Positions 20,044-64,000 of a stretch of 64,000 nt of DNA are shown in pieces; the first letter of the stretch is position 1, and every line of letters begins with the position of its first letter. The stretch is from IMG/VR virus record IMGVR_UViG_3300025000_000053, positions 185,854 through 249,853 of that record; one strand, written 5' to 3'. The position numbers and the translations under genes are program-made. The notes below the pieces were generated by a model. That model saw nothing but the letters and a program-made list of their open reading frames with translations, was not told the DNA's origin and ran no database searches.

Positions 20044-21281
20044 TTAAATTCACATACCCCACTCATAATAAATTCAGTACCTTCTAACTTAAATTGAATA
20101 ACACGTTTAGTTAATCTATATGAACCACTATAAGTTGAATTAATCTTAGAGTTATCAAATATAAAAACAAATTCTTTATTTGGTGTTACTGCTTCCATAT
20201 CAAAATCTGATATATTTATATTTATAACTGTATTATTTTCAATTTTTCTATTTTTCACATCATTGTTACTATATTCATTTCCGTAGTTATTAACTAATAC
20301 CTGATATGTTCCTACACCTCTTTGAACAGTTTCAGGTTTAATATTTTGAACAGAACCTTGTTTTGGATCTATTATAATAAAATTATTACCAATTATCTGA
20401 TCTGCTACAACAGAATTACTATATATATTTATGTTATCTGGAGTTATATTTATATAATTTTCTTTTTCAATATCTGATACAAAACTACCAGGTGTAAAAA
20501 TATTAGGATCTGTTAATTCTTTAATAGTAAATATAGTACGTTTATATTCTTCTTTTTGAAAGGCTGTGCATTTTGAATTACAGTCAATTATATACATAGC
20601 CATTAAATCAAAAAATATTAAGGCTCCTTTAGTATAAAATCCATATTGTTGATTCAAATAAAGCAAATTATTTAATAATGTTAATGGAGGTAATAGAATT
20701 TCCTTAAAAACCTTTTTGTTCTCTAATGGAGTCATTAAAACATTTCTCATACCACATGTTGATAATAAATAAACTACGGTATCAATTAAAGTACTACTAG
20801 TTATAACATTATTCACTATTTTTTTAGAATTATCTAAATCACTTTCTTTAAATAAATAAAATGAATATATATTTGATAAATCTCTAGGTGTAATTTCACT
20901 TCTTTCAACCTTCTTACTTTCATTATAACTTTTTTCATCAAAATAAGGTGTATCCTCATCCATAAAAACACAAAAAACAGTATTAAAGACATCTTTTTTA
21001 AATTGAAAATCTTTATTTACATCATACGAATATTTTTGCATCCTAATCCTAAATCTTACTTTTAATTTATTTGATAATATTTTAAAATAAACTTTTGGTT
21101 CTATAGAAACTGATAATTTAAATACTGGGAAGTAATCATTATCAAAATCATGTTCTAATAAAATCCCTTTTATAAAATTAGGGTTTATTTTAGTTGGTTC
21201 AATTTCTTCTGGAAATAAAATATCCATTGATTCAATCGTATATTTATATGTTCTCATATTATTTGGTATATTGTTAGCCAA
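20034..21281 (-). CDS. Probable baseplate hub-like structural protein
   Basis: Beta-rich 415-aa ORF with a near-match late motif (TACA-N6-TA) upstream; assignment by resemblance only. Confidence 0.35.
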   Translation of the reverse strand: MANNIPNNMRTYKYTIESMDILFPEEIEPTKINPNFIKGILLEHDFDNDYFPVFKLSVSIEPKVYFKILSNKLKVRFRIRMQKYSYDVNKDFQFKKDVFNTVFCVFMDEDTPYFDEKSYNESKKVERSEITPRDLSNIYSFYLFKESDLDNSKKIVNNVITSSTLIDTVVYLLSTCGMRNVLMTPLENKKVFKEILLPPLTLLNNLLYLNQQYGFYTKGALIFFDLMAMYIIDCNSKCTAFQKEEYKRTIFTIKELTDPNIFTPGSFVSDIEKENYINITPDNINIYSNSVVADQIIGNNFIIIDPKQGSVQNIKPETVQRGVGTYQVLVNNYGNEYSNNDVKNRKIENNTVININISDFDMEAVTPNKEFVFIFDNSKINSTYSGSYRLTKRVIQFKLEGTEFIMSGVCEFKKI

Positions 21282-21369
21282 AAAAAAACCTCCTTATTAA
21301 AAACTTCTTTAATAATTTGTATTAAAAGAAAAAAATAAACTAGAGAGATATTCTCTAGTTTATTAGTTA

Positions 21370-21927
21370 TTAAAAGATTTTTCTAGTTTTATTATTTATA
21401 ATTCTTTCTCTCCAAAATTTACGGTCAAAACATTCCTCCATTATTAGTGTTGCTAGGTTATTAGCAAATATTTCTTCAGGGTTTTCTTCATGTGCTTCAT
21501 CAGATGTGTTTAATTCAGTATTTTCGTAAAATTCTTGAAGAGTTAAATTAAATTTTTCTTTAACCCAATTTTGTTGGGATAAATTAAAATACCAACATAA
21601 TATTTTACTATTTAAAATACCATGGTGAGCTAATTCATGTAATAATAACCACATTATACTGTTAGTATGTTCATATTTATCGACAAATATAAATATTTCA
21701 TTAGTAACCGGTTGATAAAAAGCACGAAAAGCATTATCACTAGGATATTTTCTATTTTTATAATATGGATCTCTTTCAAAAAAGAATTTCTTATATTTTG
21801 AATTTATAATAAAAACATTGACATCTATTTCTTTTCCCCAAAATTTATCTGAATTAAGTTGATTAAATTCTTTTTTAATACCACTAATGTCAATACCTTT
21901 AACGTCAAAATCAATAAAGTTTATCAT
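21370..21927 (-). CDS. Zincin-like metallopeptidase
   Basis: LLLHELAHHG (HExxH) with downstream PEEIFAN acidic ligand. Confidence 0.6.
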   Translation of the reverse strand: MINFIDFDVKGIDISGIKKEFNQLNSDKFWGKEIDVNVFIINSKYKKFFFERDPYYKNRKYPSDNAFRAFYQPVTNEIFIFVDKYEHTNSIMWLLLHELAHHGILNSKILCWYFNLSQQNWVKEKFNLTLQEFYENTELNTSDEAHEENPEEIFANNLATLIMEECFDRKFWRERIINNKTRKIF

Positions 21928-40554: not shown

Positions 40555-42803
40555 AACTCTTTGATACTAAGAAATTTATCGAAGTGAATAACTTAAGAGA
40601 GGTAACAAATTTAATATTATTTGAAAAAGGAAATATCCCAACTGTTGATGGTTTATTATCAACAGATATATTTGGGGTATCATCTAGAGAAAGAAAAGAA
40701 ACATATGCTTATATTGATTTACACGGACATTTCTTACATCCATTTATATTTAAGACATTAAAACGAATGAATAGAAAATTTGAATCTGCTATATATGGGA
40801 ATATAAATTTTATAATTAAAGATGGTGAATTAGTTGAAGATGAAAACGGAGAAAGTGGAATAGACTTTTTATATAAAAATTGGGAAAAATTTAATTTTGA
40901 ACGAAATAATAGTATGATGCGTAATGAAAGAATTTCTGTTTTAGAATCATATAAAAAAAATGTTTTATTTACTAAGTATTGGATTGTTATGCCAGCTTTT
41001 TTTAGAGATGTGAATTTACAATTTGCAGCTGAAGGAAGAGTATCTCACCATGAGATAAATGATAAATATTCTAAGTTAATTAGGTTTGCTTCTATAATTA
41101 TTAATAACAATTTTGATTTTGTTCTAAATACAACTAAAGCAAAAATTCAAGAAACTCTTGTTGAAATCTACGATTTACTTAAAGGTAAGATAGAAAAGAA
41201 ACAAGGGTTGATTCGTAAATCATTATTAGGTAAATCAATAGATTTTGGCGTTAGGAGTGTAAATTTACAATGCACGTGATTCTTTAATTGTCGGGGAAGC
41301 CCTTTAAATCTCTTACTACCAAACTATAATAGCAATATTATAGTGGCGAAGGGTAATGCCTTAGGTATGGTAACAAGGTAAGAAATTAGGTAATCCGCAG
41401 CTAAGATTCTAATATATTAATATTATTAGAATAAAGTTCAACGACTATCTGATGACGCTACTTTTAGTAGAGTAGGAGTAGACTCACAAGTCAATTAATG
41501 GTGAGTTGAAATGGGAAACCATCAAAAAGATGAAGATATAGTCTAGTATCCTAGTGAAAACTAGGGAAGTTCATTAGAGAACTGCATAGTCTGACGAACT
41601 ATGTGAATACAACGAATTTCTGCACCAATATTCAAAGCGAATAAATCAGAAGATATGAAAGTCGATTTTTATAATTGTGGTATACCATTATCACAATGCT
41701 GTTCATTATGCACACCATATATGATAACTTGGGTGAAAAGATTCTTTCAGAGGGAATTAGAAAGACTTTATATGAAATATCCGGTTAAATTAAAAACAGA
41801 AGAGATTATTTATGTTAAATTAAAATCACCTGAGTTATTTTTTAATGATGAATATATTGAAAAGCAAATTAATAAATTTATTTCTAGTTATGGTGATAGA
41901 TTTGAAAAAATCAAATTACCTATAGATGATCCTAAATATGAAAAAAATATTTATTTAAGTTTTATTGGAAGAGAATTTATTAAAGGTGTTCCAGAAACAG
42001 AATCACCTTTAATACAAAGACCTGCTACATGGTGTGATATTTTATATCAAGCAGCAGTTGAAATTACTTCTGATAAACATGTTTATGTAACACGATATCC
42101 TGTTTTAGATTATTTCGGTACTTTTCCTAATAAAATTCATGTTTTATCAACTCATGAAACTATTCCAATGTTTGTTGGTTCTAGGGTATATGAGCACTAC
42201 CCTAAAATAGATATTAAAATGCCTAAAGAAAAAGTTTCTATTACCTTTGCTGATACAGTAACAATGTCAAACCTGTATTTAACAGGTCTTGGTGGAGACT
42301 ACGATGGTTCTTTAAATGCCCACTTATATGGTGACATATATGTGAATCTTCTTTAATTGTCGGGGAGGCTCTTAGAGCTTTTTATTATATAATAAAAAGA
42401 TTGGGTAATCCGCAGCTAAGATTCTAATATATTAATAATATATTAGAATAAAGTTCAACGACTATCCCTAGGTACTGAAATGTACAACAGGAGTAGGGCT
42501 CAAGTGAGTGGGTGAAAATCCCTTAAATCGAAATAGGAAGCACCTCCTATAAGGTGATGATATAGTCTAGTATCCTAGTGAAAGCTAGGGAAGTTCATAA
42601 GAGAACTGCATAGAATAACGACCTATGTGAATATATCGGATCAAGTATCTTTAAAGGTTTTATTTTCACAAGAAGCTAATCTTGAGGCAGATAGAATTAT
42701 GAAATCAAAAGGTCATATTCTTAATATCTATGGACAAAATATGAGAAAGACAACAAATGAAGGTGCTCATACTTTATTTATGTTAACAAAGTTTAATAAA
42801 TAA
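40545..42803 (+). CDS. rpoC: RNA polymerase beta' N-terminal subunit (probably virion RNAP), spliced from exons 40545-41260, 41615-42308, 42639-42803 (524 aa)
   Basis: GLIRKSLLGKSIDFGVRS-V-ISAP and GGDYDG-DQV are restored only after removing two group I introns. Frames checked; stop codon at 42801-42803. Confidence 0.85.
41261..41614 (+). mobile_element. Group I intron 1 (354 nt, ORF-less)
   Basis: P aattgtcgggga, Q aatccgcagc, R gttcaacgacta, S aagatatagtct. P1 gugu|a pairs with ugcac, giving a U.G pair at the splice site. Terminal G at 41614. Confidence 0.9.
42309..42638 (+). mobile_element. Group I intron 2 (330 nt, ORF-less), inside the catalytic DYDG/D motif
   Basis: P/Q/R/S elements present. 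The exon ends in U (ggt), the intron ends in G, and splicing restores DYDGD. Confidence 0.9.
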
Positions 42804-59064: not shown

Positions 59065-62000
59065 ATGTTATTGGAAAATAATATAAAAGAAATTATTGGT
59101 TTATTAAGTAACAAAGTATTTATTATTTCAGAAATAATGGAAACTAGAAAAACTTTTAATGAGAATCTAGAGACAATTTATGATTATTTAAAACAAGGTT
59201 TTGAAATTAAAGAATTAAGAACATGTCCAACTTACTTTAGATTTAAAGAAGATGGTTATATACACACTTTACAATTAAGACATTTTCTTACCAACTTGAT
59301 GTTTTGGGAACCATTAATGAGATTTGATTGTTCAGATAAGTTAGATGAAACTTATATTGTTGATTGTACTAAAATGTCATCTAAATTAATTAAAAATTAT
59401 ATTGATAATAAAATTGTTATACCTTATAGAAGAATAATCGAAAATAAGAAAATGAATAAAGTTATTCATGATATGATTTATAATCTATCAAGAATATCAA
59501 CAGATTTTAATATTATATTAGGATTGTCTATTAATGTTGAGACATTTATTGATGTTGCAAAAAGAAATCCAAGATTTAATGAGATTATTAGGACTCAATT
59601 AAATGAAGATATGCAACCAACTGAGATTGAGGAATATTTAGATAAATTGATGCATGAACAAATAGAAATCTTAAAAAATGATGATAAAGATAATTTATTA
59701 AAACCAATACTTAAATCAGGTGCTGGTATTAAAAGTAAACAATTGTCAGAATTCTCAATATCTGGCGGGTTAAAAATTAGCCCCGTACATAGGCGACTAT
59801 GTGCGTAAACCTCTTTAATTGCTGGGACTCTCTTAAAATATTCTTCTACCAGAATATTAATAAAAGTTGGTGTTGATATTGAAGCTAGTTAATATCGATT
59901 ATGATAAAAAGAAGAAGTTATATATAGTTACCTTTTTTAAAAATAAGGGTGGTTATAAAATAAGAACTAAAAGATTTACTTATTCTGAAGATAGTCATGG
60001 ACCTTTCGCTAGGATTCTTGCTTTACATACAATGAAGACAGGTGAGAGACTTTATCATTGGTTTGTGACTGACGGTATATATACATCTATTTTTATATAT
60101 AATAAAAAATATGGTTTTAGACGTATGTTAATCGATAATGAATTTATTGACATCGTCAAAAATCATAGGATTAATATAATTAAAAATAAAACTGGTCAGA
60201 ATATATTTTATGCGACAATAAAAATAAACGGTAAGAATGTCCCTGTACATCGTCTTATTATGGGTCTAGGAGAATATAGAAATGATCCTGTAGATCATGT
60301 ATTTCATGATTCTTTAGATAATATGAAATTAAATCTACGTGTCTGTACTCCTAGTATTAATAATAGGAATTCAAGATTACGATGTGACAGTAAAACTGGT
60401 ATACAGGGAGTTTGTTTTAATAAAAATAAATGCTCGTATACCGCAGAAGTTAGAGATTTTAATGGTAGAAAAATTAGAAAAAGCTTTCCCATAAAACTTT
60501 ATGGTGAAAATAAAGCCATTGAATTAGCAAAACAATGGCGTGAAATTATGGTAGAAGAATATTATGAGAGACAATCAGCAGCGAAGCCTGATTATTAGTC
60601 AGGAACGTTCAACGACTATCCAAAGCATGTTCATTATTGATATAAAATATAATGAACATAAGCGAGTAGAGTAGGACTAGAAGCTAATGCTAGTTCCAAA
60701 CGGGAGGCATCTCACTGAGATGATGATATAGTCTAGTATCCTAAAGTGATTTAGGGAAGTTCATAAGAGAACTGTATAGGGGTTGCGTCCTATATGAATG
60801 ATCGTAAAACCAAATATTTCTGGTACTACTATCCCTATACCTATTAATAGTAATTATATCGTAGGTGGATTGAGGAATATAACTAATTATTATATAGATT
60901 CTCTCGGTGGTCGCAAATCATTGATTATGAGTAAGCTTGAGATGGGAAATTCTGGGCATTTCGCACGTACTGTGATGCTATTAGTTTCCAGTATTAATTT
61001 ATCTAAAACAGTCGAATCATGTAATACTGTACATCCAATAAAAATTGAATTAACAACTAAAGACCATTTAATAAGAATGCGGGGTAGATATTATCGAACC
61101 ATGTATTCTAGAAATTATCAATTATTAAAAGGTGATGAATATAATTTAATAGGGGAAACTATTTTTGTTAAATCACCAGTTACTTGTGCTTGTAAAGATG
61201 GGATATGTAAAATGTGTTATGGTGAATTATCATATATAAATAATGATATTTCAATAGGTGTATATGCTGGTACAAAAATCACAGAACCAGTTTCACAAAA
61301 TATTTTATCCTCTAAACATTTATTAACAACTAAATCAGAAAAAATACAATTTAATGAAGAATTCTATAGATTTTTTAATATAAGTGGTAATGAAATAATT
61401 ATTAATCCAAATGATGATTTAGATAATTTAGATGATTATAGTTTACTTATAATTAAAAGTAATATTAAAACAATAGCTGATTATGATGATAATGATATGG
61501 AATTTAATGAATATGTAAATCTATTCCATGTATATAATAAGAAAACTAATGAGATGATAGAAATAAAAGAAAGTAGAGATAAAGATTTATATATCTCTCC
61601 TGAATTAAGAAAATTATTTAAGAAAAAAAGTAAAAAGGAAGTTTATGAAATTGATTTTAAAAATATTGATGATGATAGAATTTTTGTTATAGAAGTAGTT
61701 AATAATGAGTTAACCCGTCCACTATATGATATTATGCGTTTAATTGATAGGGTTGACTATAGAATCATACATTGGAACTGTGTTACAATTGATCAAATGT
61801 GTCAAAAGATGTTAGATTTAATAATAGAGTCTGAAATTAATTCTGACTCTGTTCATGGTGAATTAATTTTAACACCATTATTAAGAGATAAAGATGATAT
61901 ATTAGAAAGACCTAAATTTAATAAGTACTTTAATGGTGATGAAGGATACCAAATTCTAACAGTTAAATCTGCTTTAGAAAAACATCCATCAGTATTAGTT

Positions 62001-62102
62001 GGTTTATCATTCCAAGCACTTGATAGACAATTAACAAACCCATTAACATTTAGAAAAAAGGAAAGTTCATTTATTGATCCTTTCTTTAAAGAAAGACCAT
62101 AA
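59065..62102 (+). CDS. rpoC: RNA polymerase beta' C-terminal subunit (probably non-virion RNAP), exons 59065-59770 and 60805-62102 (667 aa)
   Basis: Splicing gives GGL-KPNISG. Bridge-helix-like GL..YY..GGRKSL..SGHFAR and Zn site SPVTC..ICKMCYG are present. Confidence 0.8.
59771..60804 (+). mobile_element. Group I intron 4 (1034 nt) carrying a homing endonuclease
   Basis: P1 gggu|u pairs with agccc (U.G at the junction). P aattgctggga, Q aatcagcagc, R gttcaacgacta, S gatatagtct; terminal G at 60804. Confidence 0.9.
59867..60598 (+). CDS. Intron-encoded HNH homing endonuclease with AP2-like DNA-binding domain(s)
   Basis: VHRLIM..VDHVFHDSLDN..NLR (HNH); SKTGIQGVCF..YTA..KSF..YG..AIELA (AP2). 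Confidence 0.85.
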   Translation: MVLILKLVNIDYDKKKKLYIVTFFKNKGGYKIRTKRFTYSEDSHGPFARILALHTMKTGERLYHWFVTDGIYTSIFIYNKKYGFRRMLIDNEFIDIVKNHRINIIKNKTGQNIFYATIKINGKNVPVHRLIMGLGEYRNDPVDHVFHDSLDNMKLNLRVCTPSINNRNSRLRCDSKTGIQGVCFNKNKCSYTAEVRDFNGRKIRKSFPIKLYGENKAIELAKQWREIMVEEYYERQSAAKPDY

Positions 62103-62247
62103 AAATATTATAAAAAAGAAAAAGGAGATGTTTTATAATGAAAGGAAATTTTATAAAAGTAAAAGTTGATGAAAACTTAGATATTGAATATAAAGATACT
62201 GATGCAATCAAATTATACCCGATTGTTTTAATATTTTATATTCAAAT

Positions 62248-62724
62248 ATGATTATCAAAACTATTAATTTTAAGAATATCAATGAAACAGCTTTATTAAA
62301 AATAATTGAGATAAGATTAAAAGAAATTCAAAAAAAATCAATTAATTATCTTGAAAGTAAAGTTCTTATTCGATGTATTGAATCAGCATTAACCGTTATA
62401 CATGATATAGAAAGTTATAAAACAACTACAATTAAATCAATGAAACAGCGTTTAATAGAATGCTATGAAGATGCTGTTAAAAATAAAATGAAATATATTG
62501 GTTATATCACTACATTAACTACTGATGATGTATATAGTGATTATGTTATTTCATCAATAGAAAAATTTCAAGTTAATATACAATATCTAAATACTTTTAA
62601 TGATGATTTAGTTAAAATGACCAATAAACGATTTAAAATAACAGCATTTTGTTCTGGAGATTCATTTAGTGAAATAGAAGAAAAAATAAATAAATTTGAA
62701 AAGGGGGAGTTTATTAATGAATGA
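62248..62724 (+). CDS. Hypothetical protein
   Basis: 158-aa ORF downstream of the RNAP gene. Confidence 0.5.
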   Translation: MIIKTINFKNINETALLKIIEIRLKEIQKKSINYLESKVLIRCIESALTVIHDIESYKTTTIKSMKQRLIECYEDAVKNKMKYIGYITTLTTDDVYSDYVISSIEKFQVNIQYLNTFNDDLVKMTNKRFKITAFCSGDSFSEIEEKINKFEKGEFINE

Positions 62725-63160
62725 ATCTATTAAAAAAGAAACTTTTACTTTAAAATTAGCAAGAGAAATTGGAAAACCTAATGAAGATAATATATTCATT
62801 AGTAAAGATGTTTGGACTAGTTCTTTAAACGGATATATTAAAGAATTAATAGAAAAAAATAGTTTTTTCATTACTTTAGGTAAAGAAGAACTATTTCATA
62901 TTAATTTGCTAAAAGCTGTTGCTAGAATAAAAGAAATAAATGATAAATATGCTATTATTGAATTAATTAAAATTTCTAATTATATTGAAATTTTCGTTAA
63001 AAATATGGGAATTGATAATTTAAGATTAAATTTTAATGCTCATTTTAAATATGAACAAAAAAATAATTTAAAAATTGTAACTGAAATTAAATTAGGAACT
63101 TTTTATATAGATTATTATTCAGTACCAAGTCATACTAGAATAAAAAGAGGAGATGTATGA
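62696..63160 (+). CDS. Hypothetical protein
   Basis: SD aaggggga before the ATG at about 62717. Confidence 0.5.
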   Translation: MKRGSLLMNESIKKETFTLKLAREIGKPNEDNIFISKDVWTSSLNGYIKELIEKNSFFITLGKEELFHINLLKAVARIKEINDKYAIIELIKISNYIEIFVKNMGIDNLRLNFNAHFKYEQKNNLKIVTEIKLGTFYIDYYSVPSHTRIKRGDV

Positions 63161-63161
63161 A

Positions 63162-64000
63162 ATGAAAAAAACACTTGAACAACAACATCTTTCTGTACAA
63201 TATAAAAAGGAGTTAGGTTGTGTTTTACCAAATCAATTTGATATTATATCAAAAGTTGGTAATTATGATGATGTAAAAGTTATTAATACTATTAAATTTC
63301 AGGAAGGTTCTGTTGAGGAATTTGGAATTAATGGTGTTACTGAAGAGAGTTTATTATCTGTATTAATGATAAGATTTGAAGAACTTCAAAAAAGTCCTCT
63401 TTCTTGTGAAAAATATCAATTATCATTAGAATTAGTAAATACACTATTACAATTATTAACAAAAACCGATGAAAATTATCTAGTTCAAAATAATATAAGT
63501 AAAACAACTCTAAATCTTTTACTTGAAAAAAGAAAAGAAATTAAAGAAGAAATATTAACTAGAAAAATAACCCTAAAGCAGAGATTCCTTAATCTTATTG
63601 ATGAAGCTATTAAAAGGAATATTAATCGTATTGTAATTATTGTACAGCAAATAGATAATTGTGATTGTGAACCAATTCATAATTATTATGGAGGTATGAA
63701 TAATAATTGTTTTTCTGATAAATTAAGATATAAGCTGATTGATATTGAGACAGATGGGTTTAATATTTTAAAAAATGATATTATAGAAAATTTTGACGAT
63801 GAATTAAATCATAAAATATTTAGTAAAACATTAATATTTAGTTTTTGTTATAGTAATTATATTGATAATGAACTCAATGAAAACATTTGTAAGTTATTAA
63901 ATTTTAGACCATATAAACTCTATAATTCACCTAAAAAATGTTTATTAGATTATATTAAATACTCTGTTAGTATTCTTAGGAAATATATTGGTTATATTAT
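63162..64000 (+). CDS. Acb2-like (anti-CBASS cyclic-nucleotide sponge) domain fused to an unknown region; runs off the window
   Basis: Manual translation is open to the window end (at least 279 codons): IKFQEGSVEEFGINGVTEESLLSVLMIRFEELQKSPLSCEKYQLSL. SD gaggag. Confidence 0.6.
   Translation, partial: MKKTLEQQHLSVQYKKELGCVLPNQFDIISKVGNYDDVKVINTIKFQEGSVEEFGINGVTEESLLSVLMIRFEELQKSPLSCEKYQLSLELVNTLLQLLTKTDENYLVQNNISKTTLNLLLEKRKEIKEEILTRKITLKQRFLNLIDEAIKRNINRIVIIVQQIDNCDCEPIHNYYGGMNNNCFSDKLRYKLIDIETDGFNILKNDIIENFDDELNHKIFSKTLIFSFCYSNYIDNELNENICKLLNFRPYKLYNSPKKCLLDYIKYSVSILRKYIGYI

What the first reader, a model, noticed from the sequence alone, without database searches (positions are those of the whole stretch)
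63162..64000. Hidden edge ORF: Acb2-like sponge domain fused to a long extension
Seen: an ORF absent from the track; about 63280-63470 encodes KFQEGSVEEFGINGVTEESLLSVLMIRFEELQKSPLSCEKY. Established: Acb2 proteins are about 90-aa stand-alone sponges with FQ.G...E.G.NG.T.E.LL....RL..F...PF.CREN that bind CBASS and Thoeris signals. Here CREN becomes CEKY, the C-terminal Arg patch is missing, and more than 170 extra residues follow. Inference: a divergent sponge with altered ligand range, or a nucleotide-sensing domain controlling a fused effector.
Basis: partly seen in the sequence, partly recalled or inferred. Interest (0 to 1): 0.68.

Follow-up and report, generated by a model that had tools for sequence, protein, structure and literature searches.

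The report
Pocket-less Tad1-like domain fused to orphan repeats
The ORF at the window edge is real: it is the first 279 codons of a roughly 345-codon jumbo-phage gene whose N-terminus belongs to the Tad1 family of immune-signal sponges (closer to Tad1 than to Acb2). It has lost every known ligand-contact residue and is fused to two copies of an orphan domain, so its function is still open.

Summary
Window 63162-63998 (+) is an open frame cut by the contig end, and the quoted peptide is there. A 95% identical second copy in the same contig gives the full 344-aa protein.

The family call needs correcting. The N-terminal ~105 residues are Tad1 family: phrog_2428 E 8e-14, CmTad1 E 1e-8, and the top 20 Foldseek PDB hits are all Tad1. 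No solved Acb2 chain matches. Pfam does unite the two families in one 'Acb2/Tad1 hairpin' model, but that model does not hit this protein.

The validated Tad1 contacts are all replaced: pocket F/N/R/R becomes L/Y/T/Y, the RGVEG lid becomes NNIS, and the trinucleotide R/T pair becomes E/E.

The 240-residue extension is a helical linker plus a tandem duplication of an orphan alpha/beta module (hhalign 94.5%, E 8e-8). In 1.84 billion representative proteins it has one full-length relative.

Codons 1-150 are 95-97% identical in DNA to that relative, against about 85% in the flanks. Codons ~153-272 are unalignable.

The gene sits in the early polB / non-virion RNAP beta' / helicase block of an AR9/PBS1-like phage. 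My best reading is a counter-defence accessory protein that uses the Tad1 fold as a scaffold. A retuned sponge is not excluded. Nothing points to an effector.

The parts
63162..64000 (+). Partial CDS: codons 1-279 of a ~345-codon gene, cut by the contig end. The full-length counterpart is at contig 20346-21380 (L002:1497-2531, 344 aa).
63144..63152 (+). Shine-Dalgarno-like AAAGAGGAG, 9 nt before ATG 63162. The upstream ORF's stop is at 63158-63160, so the two genes are tightly coupled.
   Evidence: Read directly.
63162..63476 (+). Tad1-family domain, residues ~1-105. It has three beta strands, the FQEG..EEFGING.TEESLL loop, and two helices containing the invariant Cys. The canonical ligand residues are substituted.
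63477..63563 (+). Conserved helical linker, residues ~106-134. It replaces the RGVEG lid of Tad1.
63564..63920 (+). Orphan alpha/beta module, copy 1 (residues ~135-253). It carries the F-[DN]-D-E-L ... I..F.YS motif. Its first half is hypervariable between phages.
63921..64000 (+). Start of module copy 2 (residues 254-279). The remaining ~66 codons lie beyond the contig end.
62696..63160 (+). Upstream ORF of 147-154 aa with no family assignment. It is conserved immediately in front of the gene in all three phage versions, with a gap of 1-2 nt.
62248..62724 (+). 158-aa tandem paralogue, made of a degenerate Tad1-like helical remnant plus one copy of the orphan module. It is absent from the contig's first copy of this region.
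60798..62102 (+). Context: C-terminal part of an RNA polymerase beta' subunit. Its best cultured match is the non-virion RNAP beta' C-terminus of Bacillus phage AR9.

Best explanation
SHOWN
- The gene encodes a ~345-aa, three-part protein of an AT-rich (24.5% GC) AR9/PBS1-like jumbo phage.
- Part 1 is an N-terminal Tad1-family domain.
- Part 2 is a conserved helical linker that takes the place of Tad1's C-terminal lid.
- Part 3 is two tandem copies of a ~95-115-aa orphan alpha/beta module.
- The domain keeps the structural core of Tad1: the FQ.G...E.G.NG.T.E.LL loop, the Arg of helix 1 and the invariant Cys.
- Every residue shown by mutagenesis to hold gcADPR/cGAMP or cyclic trinucleotides in Tad1 is replaced.

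INFERRED
- It is not a canonical gcADPR, cyclic-dinucleotide or cyclic-trinucleotide sponge.
- Most likely it is an early-expressed counter-defence accessory protein. In this reading the Tad1 fold has been kept as a self-associating scaffold, and the fast-evolving duplicated C-terminal module supplies the specificity for a host protein or another small molecule.
- The precedents are known sponge fusions, namely Tad2-Acb4 and Sequestin fusions, and PhiKZ gp184, which is Tad1 fused to a capsid-targeting domain.
For: Family:
- phrog_2428 E 7.9e-14.
- CmTad1 1.1e-8 and CbTad1 7e-4.
- The family profile finds only Tad1 and gp184 in the PDB.
- The top 20 Foldseek PDB hits are all Tad1, probability 1.00, TM about 0.5 by target.
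- The model topology is three strands plus two helices, as described for Tad1 in bioRxiv 10.1101/2023.11.15.567273.

Lost contacts:
- CbTad1 F82 is L here. The family has F in 15/20.
- N92 is Y. The family has N in 20/20.
- R109 is T. The family has R in 19/20.
- R113 is Y. The family has R in 18/20.
- The RGVEG lid is QNNIS.
- The trinucleotide pair R88/T95 of CmTad1 is E/E.

Extension:
- Of 28 hits among 1.84 billion representatives, 27 stop at about residue 110. Only one relative is full length.
- The internal duplication has hhalign probability 94.5%, E 8.2e-8.
- The same module sits in a neighbouring 158-aa paralogue next to a degenerate Tad1-like remnant.

Selection pattern:
- Codons 1-150 are 95-97% identical in DNA to the relative phage, against 80-89% in the flanks.
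- Codons ~153-272 give no DNA alignment and about 33% amino-acid identity.

Context:
- The gene lies between the non-virion RNAP beta' C-terminus and a DEAH helicase, next to polB.
- In AR9 this block is driven by annotated early promoters.

Precedents for fusions.
Against: - No binding or activity was measured, and none could be.
- The oligomeric state is unknown. The homodimer test gave no verdict. Only 1 of the 8 CmTad1 hexamer-interface residues is kept.
- The loop lining the Tad1 pocket (G.NG.T) is perfectly kept, and two pocket positions became Tyr. That could equally mean a remodelled pocket rather than a dead one.
- The C-terminal fold could not be modelled: pLDDT 36 alone and below 50 in the whole-protein model.
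- The high N-terminal DNA identity has few synonymous changes. It may reflect a recent recombination rather than purifying selection.
- The host is unknown, as is whether it carries Thoeris or CBASS.
Confidence: 0.45

Rival explanations
1. Retuned sponge. The Tad1-like domain still forms an oligomer with a pocket, but the pocket has been rebuilt (N/R/R to Y/T/Y) to sequester a different immune signal. Candidates include His-ADPR, N7-cADPR, cyclic mononucleotides, cA4/cA6 or an unknown molecule.
For: - Sponge families are known to shift specificity by pocket substitutions. About a quarter of tested homologues inhibit none of seven systems, which hints at unknown ligands (bioRxiv 10.1101/2025.08.24.671296).
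- The pocket-lining loop is fully conserved.
- The substituted residues are invariant across all alleles.
- Two of the new residues are Tyr, which could stack on bases. Y11 does this in Acb2 (PMC10312549).
Against: - All positively charged contacts and the lid are lost at once.
- The core has the fewest Lys+Arg residues of 23 family members, and net charge -5 to -6. Known sponge pockets are positively charged.
- The lid is replaced by a long helix leading into 240 further residues.
Confidence: 0.25
2. One reading: a nucleotide-sensing domain that controls a fused effector.
For: The architecture, a small ligand-type domain followed by a large extension, is formally compatible with this.
Against: - The extension has no match to any enzyme or effector family in Pfam, PHROGs or the PDB.
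- It is an internally duplicated orphan module.
- The sensor's known ligand contacts are gone.
- No Tad1 or Acb2 relative is known to act as a sensor. This last point is from the papers read.
Confidence: 0.07
3. Virion-delivered protein of the PhiKZ gp184 type. One part anchors the protein in the capsid, and the Tad1-like part is released and injected with the DNA.
For: - PhiKZ gp184 is a Tad1 fused to a capsid-embedded domain and is cleaved by the head protease (PMC11297242; bioRxiv 10.1101/2025.11.23.690004).
- Its Tad1 part matches this protein at E 2e-6.
- This phage is also a jumbo phage with multisubunit RNAPs.
Against: - The domain order is reversed.
- The non-Tad1 parts are not similar.
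- The gene lies in a replication/transcription block, not among structural genes.
- gp184 keeps the N and the Arg-rich GTEG tail, whereas this protein does not.
Confidence: 0.1
4. A decaying, functionless relic of a former Tad1 gene.
For: - Loss of all functional residues.
- A degenerate paralogue lies next door, with a frameshifted upstream fragment.
- One allele carries a 30-aa in-frame duplication.
Against: - Intact frames of 328-374 aa occur in four alleles from different contigs.
- The N-terminal part is better conserved than the surrounding genome.
- The start is coupled to a conserved upstream gene.
Confidence: 0.05

Closest known systems
Tad1 (Thoeris anti-defence 1; SBSphiJ7, CbTad1 7UAV/7UAW, CmTad1 8KBB; phrog_2428)
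   Same: - Significant sequence similarity over residues ~20-105.
- The same consensus loop, FQ.G...E.G.NG.T.E.LL.
- The same invariant Cys.
- The same predicted topology of a beta-sheet plus two helices.
   Different: - 344 aa rather than ~120.
- Pocket residues F/N/R/R, the RGVEG lid and the trinucleotide R/T pair are all substituted.
- 7 of the 8 hexamer-interface residues differ.
- Oligomeric state and ligand are unknown.
PhiKZ gp184 (Tad1 fused to a capsid-embedded N-terminal domain; PDB 8Y6V chain I)
   Same: A jumbo-phage protein in which a Tad1-type domain is fused to a second, unrelated part. The Tad1 parts align at E 2e-6.
   Different: - In gp184 the Tad1 domain is C-terminal and keeps CEEN and the Arg-rich tail.
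- Its partner domain is a virion anchor unrelated to the modules here.
Acb2 (anti-CBASS 2; PaMx33 gp26, T4 Vs.4)
   Same: - Pfam groups the Acb2 and Tad1 helical hairpin in one model, PF24729.
- Both families hold cyclic trinucleotides with an Arg and a Thr seven residues apart.
   Different: - No solved Acb2 chain is found by sequence, profile or fold search.
- PF24729 does not hit this protein.
- Acb2 lacks Tad1's N-terminal sheet. That statement rests on the structure descriptions in the papers read, not on a test here.
Sponge-sponge fusions (Tad2-Acb4, Sequestin PF21825 fused to Tad2 or Acb4)
   Same: A known sponge-family domain is fused to a small domain of unknown function. In those cases, that kind of fusion led to the discovery of a new sponge.
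   Different: - The partner here matches none of PF11195, PF13876 or PF21825.
- The Tad1-like part itself looks ligand-dead.

Membership tests
Tad1 (phrog_2428 / PDB 7UAV, 8KBB) | Significant sequence similarity to family members | tested here: met
   phrog_2428 at 7.9e-14 and 4e-16 in six frames. CmTad1 at 1.1e-8. tblastn hits to Bacillus-phage Tad1 genes.
Tad1 (phrog_2428 / PDB 7UAV, 8KBB) | Fold: N-terminal antiparallel sheet followed by two helices | tested here: met
   The AF2 model has E5-11, E23-29, E36-43, H59-75 and H82-99, with pLDDT 55-80. The top 20 Foldseek PDB hits are all Tad1, probability 1.00, TM 0.50-0.55 by target. The model is of only moderate confidence.
Tad1 (phrog_2428 / PDB 7UAV, 8KBB) | gcADPR / cyclic-dinucleotide pocket residues (CbTad1 F82, N92, R109, R113) and the C-terminal lid (residues 116-122, RGVEG) | tested here: not met
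   The pocket residues are L, Y, T, Y and the lid is QNNIS. In 20 other members the same positions are F 15, N 20, R 19 and R 18, and the lid positions are G13, V16, E16, G17.
Tad1 (phrog_2428 / PDB 7UAV, 8KBB) | Cyclic-trinucleotide site (CmTad1 R88 and T95) | tested here: not met
   Both positions are Glu. They also vary among the relatives collected here.
Tad1 (phrog_2428 / PDB 7UAV, 8KBB) | Small stand-alone protein forming a homo-hexamer (a trimer of dimers) | tested here: inconclusive
   The size criterion is not met: 344 aa, with the domain at the N-terminus. The homodimer prediction gave no verdict. Only 1 of 8 interface residues is kept.
Tad1 (phrog_2428 / PDB 7UAV, 8KBB) | Sequesters the signal and inhibits Thoeris or CBASS | not testable with these tools
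   Needs binding and plaque assays.
Acb2 | Sequence or profile similarity to solved Acb2 proteins | tested here: not met
   No Acb2 chain at E<=10 with the protein, its N-domain or the family profile.
Acb2 | Match to Pfam PF24729 (Acb2/Tad1 hairpin) | tested here: not met
   No hit at E<=10 for the protein or for the genome. Six of 31 relatives hit it, all below the 27-bit cut-off, over helices 1-2.
Acb2 | Structural match to Acb2 | tested here: not met
   No Acb2 entry appears among the 50 best Foldseek PDB rows or the 50 VIA-align rows.
Acb2 | Cyclic-dinucleotide residues Y11 and K26 | not tested
   No alignment to Acb2 could be obtained.
Sponge-sponge fusion (Tad2 / Acb4 / Sequestin partners) | The second domain belongs to a known sponge family | tested here: not met
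   Pfam scans of the extension at E<=5-10 list none of PF11195, PF13876 or PF21825. PF13876 has no match in the genome.
PhiKZ gp184-type capsid-targeted Tad1 | Capsid-anchoring domain homologous to gp184 residues 1-118 | tested here: not met
   BLASTP aligns only the Tad1 parts.

The most novel reading that the evidence does not exclude
The fusion marks a new counter-defence module. One possibility is that the duplicated orphan C-terminal module forms an intramolecular pseudo-dimer that binds a host immune signal or protein. That would make it a new sponge or inhibitor family found by 'guilt by fusion', as Sequestin was. The other is that the rebuilt Tyr-lined Tad1 pocket captures a signal that no known sponge binds.
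Probability: 0.2. Interest if true: 0.75.

Novelty: new variant of a known kind. Interest (0 to 1): 0.45.

Why it matters
Sponge proteins have been useful both as phage counter-defences and as tools for discovering new immune signalling molecules. Fusions to known sponges have already led to a new family, Sequestin.

A Tad1 fold that has shed all its known ligand contacts yet is kept more faithfully than the surrounding genome, joined to a fast-evolving duplicated domain, could be one of two things. It could be a natural example of a sponge fold reused as a scaffold, or a pointer to an unknown ligand or target.

The limitation is that the architecture occurs in only one small lineage of uncultured AR9-like jumbo phages with an unknown host. 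General importance therefore depends on experiments.

Tried and rejected
- Pfam on the whole protein and on its parts gave only chance-level hits: DUF1959, DUF7499 and DUF7325, all below cut-off.
- I first took PF13876 for the Acb2 family, from memory. A paper shows it is Acb4. It has no match in the genome anyway, so that test says nothing about Acb2.
- The word-index protein search with the N-domain alone found nothing. With the full protein it found only three close clusters.
- The ESM Atlas feature search of the extension gave no usable hit.
- AF2 of the extension alone failed, with mean pLDDT 36. Fold matches to residues 136-237 (a designed protein at Z 5.7, HHV-6 IE2 at Z 5.5) are within the noise. 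I make no claim about the fold of the extension.
- The homodimer prediction of residues 1-150 gave no verdict. It counts neither for nor against self-association.
- phrog_3915, the weak match of the module, is absent from PhiKZ, AR9 and Atlee. The 158-aa paralogue has no match in cultured phages.
- The upstream RNAP fragment is not similar to PhiKZ gp180, so I dropped the idea of synteny with gp180-gp184.
- The net charge of the domain is at the acidic end of the family but not outside its range. This is weak evidence only.
- AR9's early-promoter motif is too AT-rich to be searched meaningfully in a 24.5% GC genome.
No reads were laid, so neither expression nor the status of the contig-end repeat was checked with reads.

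Full report
**1. The observation**

The + strand frame 63153..63998 is open to the end of the window. The likely start is ATG 63162. It is preceded at 9 nt by AAAGAGGAG and lies 2 nt after the stop of the upstream ORF. The full-length alleles also begin MKK. The translation contains the quoted peptide at residues 45-85.

The window's last base is the last base of a 249,853-bp IMG/VR-type virus contig. The frame is therefore cut by the assembly, not by biology.

A self-comparison shows that the contig's last 21.6 kb (228254-249853) is an 81-89% identical copy of its first 21.2 kb. The alignment begins at contig base 1 and ends at the last base. This is what a wrap-around of a ~228-kb permuted genome built from two co-occurring strains would give. 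Related contigs of 187-233 kb, and a 95-kb contig from the same sample carrying the copy-1 allele, fit that reading.

The counterpart gene in the first copy is complete at 344 aa. A metagenomic protein of 345 aa is 277/279 identical to the window allele. So the window holds the first 81% of the gene.

**2. Which family**

Pfam gives nothing for the protein or its parts.

PHROGs gives phrog_2428 at 7.9e-14. That family is Tad1: the annotated 'anti-thoeris viral protein' of Bacillus phage Atlee covers the whole profile at 5.9e-52.

Against all PDB sequences, the N-domain finds three things:
- CmTad1 (8KBB) at 1.1e-8.
- CbTad1 at 7e-4.
- PhiKZ gp184 (8Y6V chain I) at 1e-4.

A profile of 23 relatives finds the same entries, at 4.7e-32 for CmTad1 and 6.9e-23 for CbTad1 (gp184's 8.4e-29 is by construction, since its sequence is in that profile), and no Acb2 chain at E<=10.

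The AlphaFold model is of moderate quality in this part. It has three strands and two helices, which is the topology described for Tad1. The 20 best Foldseek PDB matches are all Tad1.

PhiKZ gp184 is already known as that phage's Tad1. It is fused to an N-terminal capsid-embedded part and is released by the head protease.

The label 'Acb2-like' is not baseless, for three reasons:
- Pfam has a model called 'Acb2/Tad1 hairpin' (PF24729).
- Several relatives hit that model below threshold over helices 1-2.
- BFVD carries that name on some structural neighbours.

However, PF24729 does not hit this protein or this genome.

**3. What is kept and what is lost**

I used the residues defined by mutagenesis in bioRxiv 10.1101/2023.11.15.567273 and the alignments. 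Family counts are from 20 other members.

| Tad1 feature | Reference residue | This protein | Family (of 20) |
|---|---|---|---|
| gcADPR / dinucleotide pocket | CbTad1 F82 | L | F 15 |
| gcADPR / dinucleotide pocket | CbTad1 N92 | Y | N 20 |
| gcADPR / dinucleotide pocket | CbTad1 R109 | T | R 19 |
| gcADPR / dinucleotide pocket | CbTad1 R113 | Y | R 18 |
| Lid, residues 116-122 | RGVEG | QNNIS | mostly RGVEG |
| Trinucleotide site | CmTad1 R88 | E | variable |
| Trinucleotide site | CmTad1 T95 | E | variable |

Seven of the eight hexamer-interface residues also differ.

The FQ.G...E.G.NG.T.E.LL loop, the Arg of helix 1 and the invariant Cys are retained. All of the substituted residues are identical in the three alleles.

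The structural core is therefore preserved while the known chemistry is gone.

**4. The extension**

A full HMMER scan of 1.84 billion representative proteins found 28 hits. Twenty-seven of them end near residue 110. Only one, a 328-aa protein from 187-233-kb contigs, is full length.

The extension starts with a conserved helix and then contains two homologous modules, residues ~134-252 and 253-344. The profile-profile probability is 94.5%, E 8.2e-8. Both modules share an F-[DN]-D-E-L ... I..F.YS signature.

The module resembles phrog_3915 (unknown function) only weakly.

In the window allele, a 158-aa gene just upstream (62248-62724) combines a degenerate Tad1-like remnant with one such module. 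It has an intact 71% identical relative elsewhere. So the pairing of the two elements recurs.

The fold of the module could not be predicted. I claim no fold for it.

**5. Evolution and context**

Against the relative phage, the picture along the gene is as follows:
- Codons 1-150 are 95-97% identical in DNA.
- The flanking genes are 80-89% identical.
- Codons ~153-272 give no nucleotide alignment and about 33% amino-acid identity.
- Similarity returns in the last ~70 codons.

The pattern is a conserved head with a hypervariable module. It fits an interaction with a fast-changing partner, but recombination is an alternative explanation.

In all versions, the gene follows a conserved 139-154-aa ORF with a 1-2-nt gap. 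It sits between the C-terminal part of an RNAP beta' subunit and a DEAH helicase, close to polB.

The beta' fragment is closest (31% identity) to the non-virion RNAP beta' C-terminus of Bacillus phages AR9 and PBS1. There, the syntenic polB / beta' / helicase block carries annotated early promoters.

The genome has 24.5% GC. It has no other Tad1-family gene.

**6. Interpretation**

Shown:
- This is a Tad1-family domain fusion with the canonical ligand contacts replaced.
- Its extension is a duplicated orphan module.
- The architecture is restricted to one small lineage of uncultured jumbo phages.

Inferred, at about 45% confidence: an early counter-defence accessory protein that uses the Tad1 fold as a scaffold and the variable modules for specificity.

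Rivals:
- A retuned sponge with a Tyr-lined pocket, about 25%.
- A virion-delivered protein of the gp184 type, about 10%.
- A decaying relic, about 5%.

None of these can be settled without binding, oligomerisation and infection assays.

**7. Novelty**

Already known:
- Tad1 itself.
- Tad1 fused to another domain (PhiKZ gp184).
- Sponge-sponge fusions.

New here:
- A Tad1 domain at the N-terminus that has lost all validated contacts.
- A partner that is a duplicated orphan module.

This is a new variant of a known kind, of moderate interest.

Noticed in passing
Whole contig; window 42401-64000 = contig 228254-249853: The last 21.6 kb of the contig is an 81-89% identical copy of its first 21.2 kb. 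The alignment starts at contig base 1 and ends at the last base. The probable cause is a wrap-around assembly of a ~228-kb permuted genome from two co-occurring strains, not a true repeat. Every gene in this part of the window therefore has a diverged second allele near the contig start.
   Followed up: partly
Window 41199-41566 and 42299-42590, plus at least 13 further dispersed copies across the contig (for example contig 1-232, 18495-18690, 40676-40908, 73030-73278, 242536-242766): Two group I introns reach the Rfam threshold (RF00028, 57 and 76 bits). A dispersed 200-350-bp repeat family with 15 or more copies overlaps the second one. In the relative phage, copies of this repeat flank a NUMOD4 homing-endonuclease gene. 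The phage appears to be heavily colonised by introns.
   Followed up: partly
Window 60700-60800: The sequence just upstream of the RNAP beta' C-terminal ORF is GC-richer (0.28-0.32 against about 0.22) and looks structured. That ORF may be an exon following an intron rather than a separately initiated gene.
   Followed up: no
Window 62139-62724: A 37-aa ORF overlaps the start of the 158-aa ORF in another frame (ATGA overlap). Together they give a weak Tad1-family match (E 0.008) that lacks the G.NG loop. This is a tandem, partly decayed paralogue, present in this allele of the region but absent from the contig's first copy.
   Followed up: partly
L009:4001-5125 (IMG/VR contig from the same JGI sample): This allele of the gene carries an exact in-frame 30-aa tandem duplication inside the Tad1-like sheet (VLPNQ...FQEGS twice), giving 374 aa. 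It could be a real variant or an assembly artefact.
   Followed up: no
L006:13470-14159 (PhiKZ gp184): Unlike the protein studied here, PhiKZ's capsid-associated Tad1 keeps the family's CEEN motif and its Arg-rich GTEG tail. That is consistent with its reported anti-Thoeris role.
   Followed up: partly
P0008, P0015, P0016 (hits): Some metagenomic relatives of 258-284 aa contain two Tad1-like domains in tandem. Tandem Tad1 fusions therefore exist in nature.
   Followed up: no
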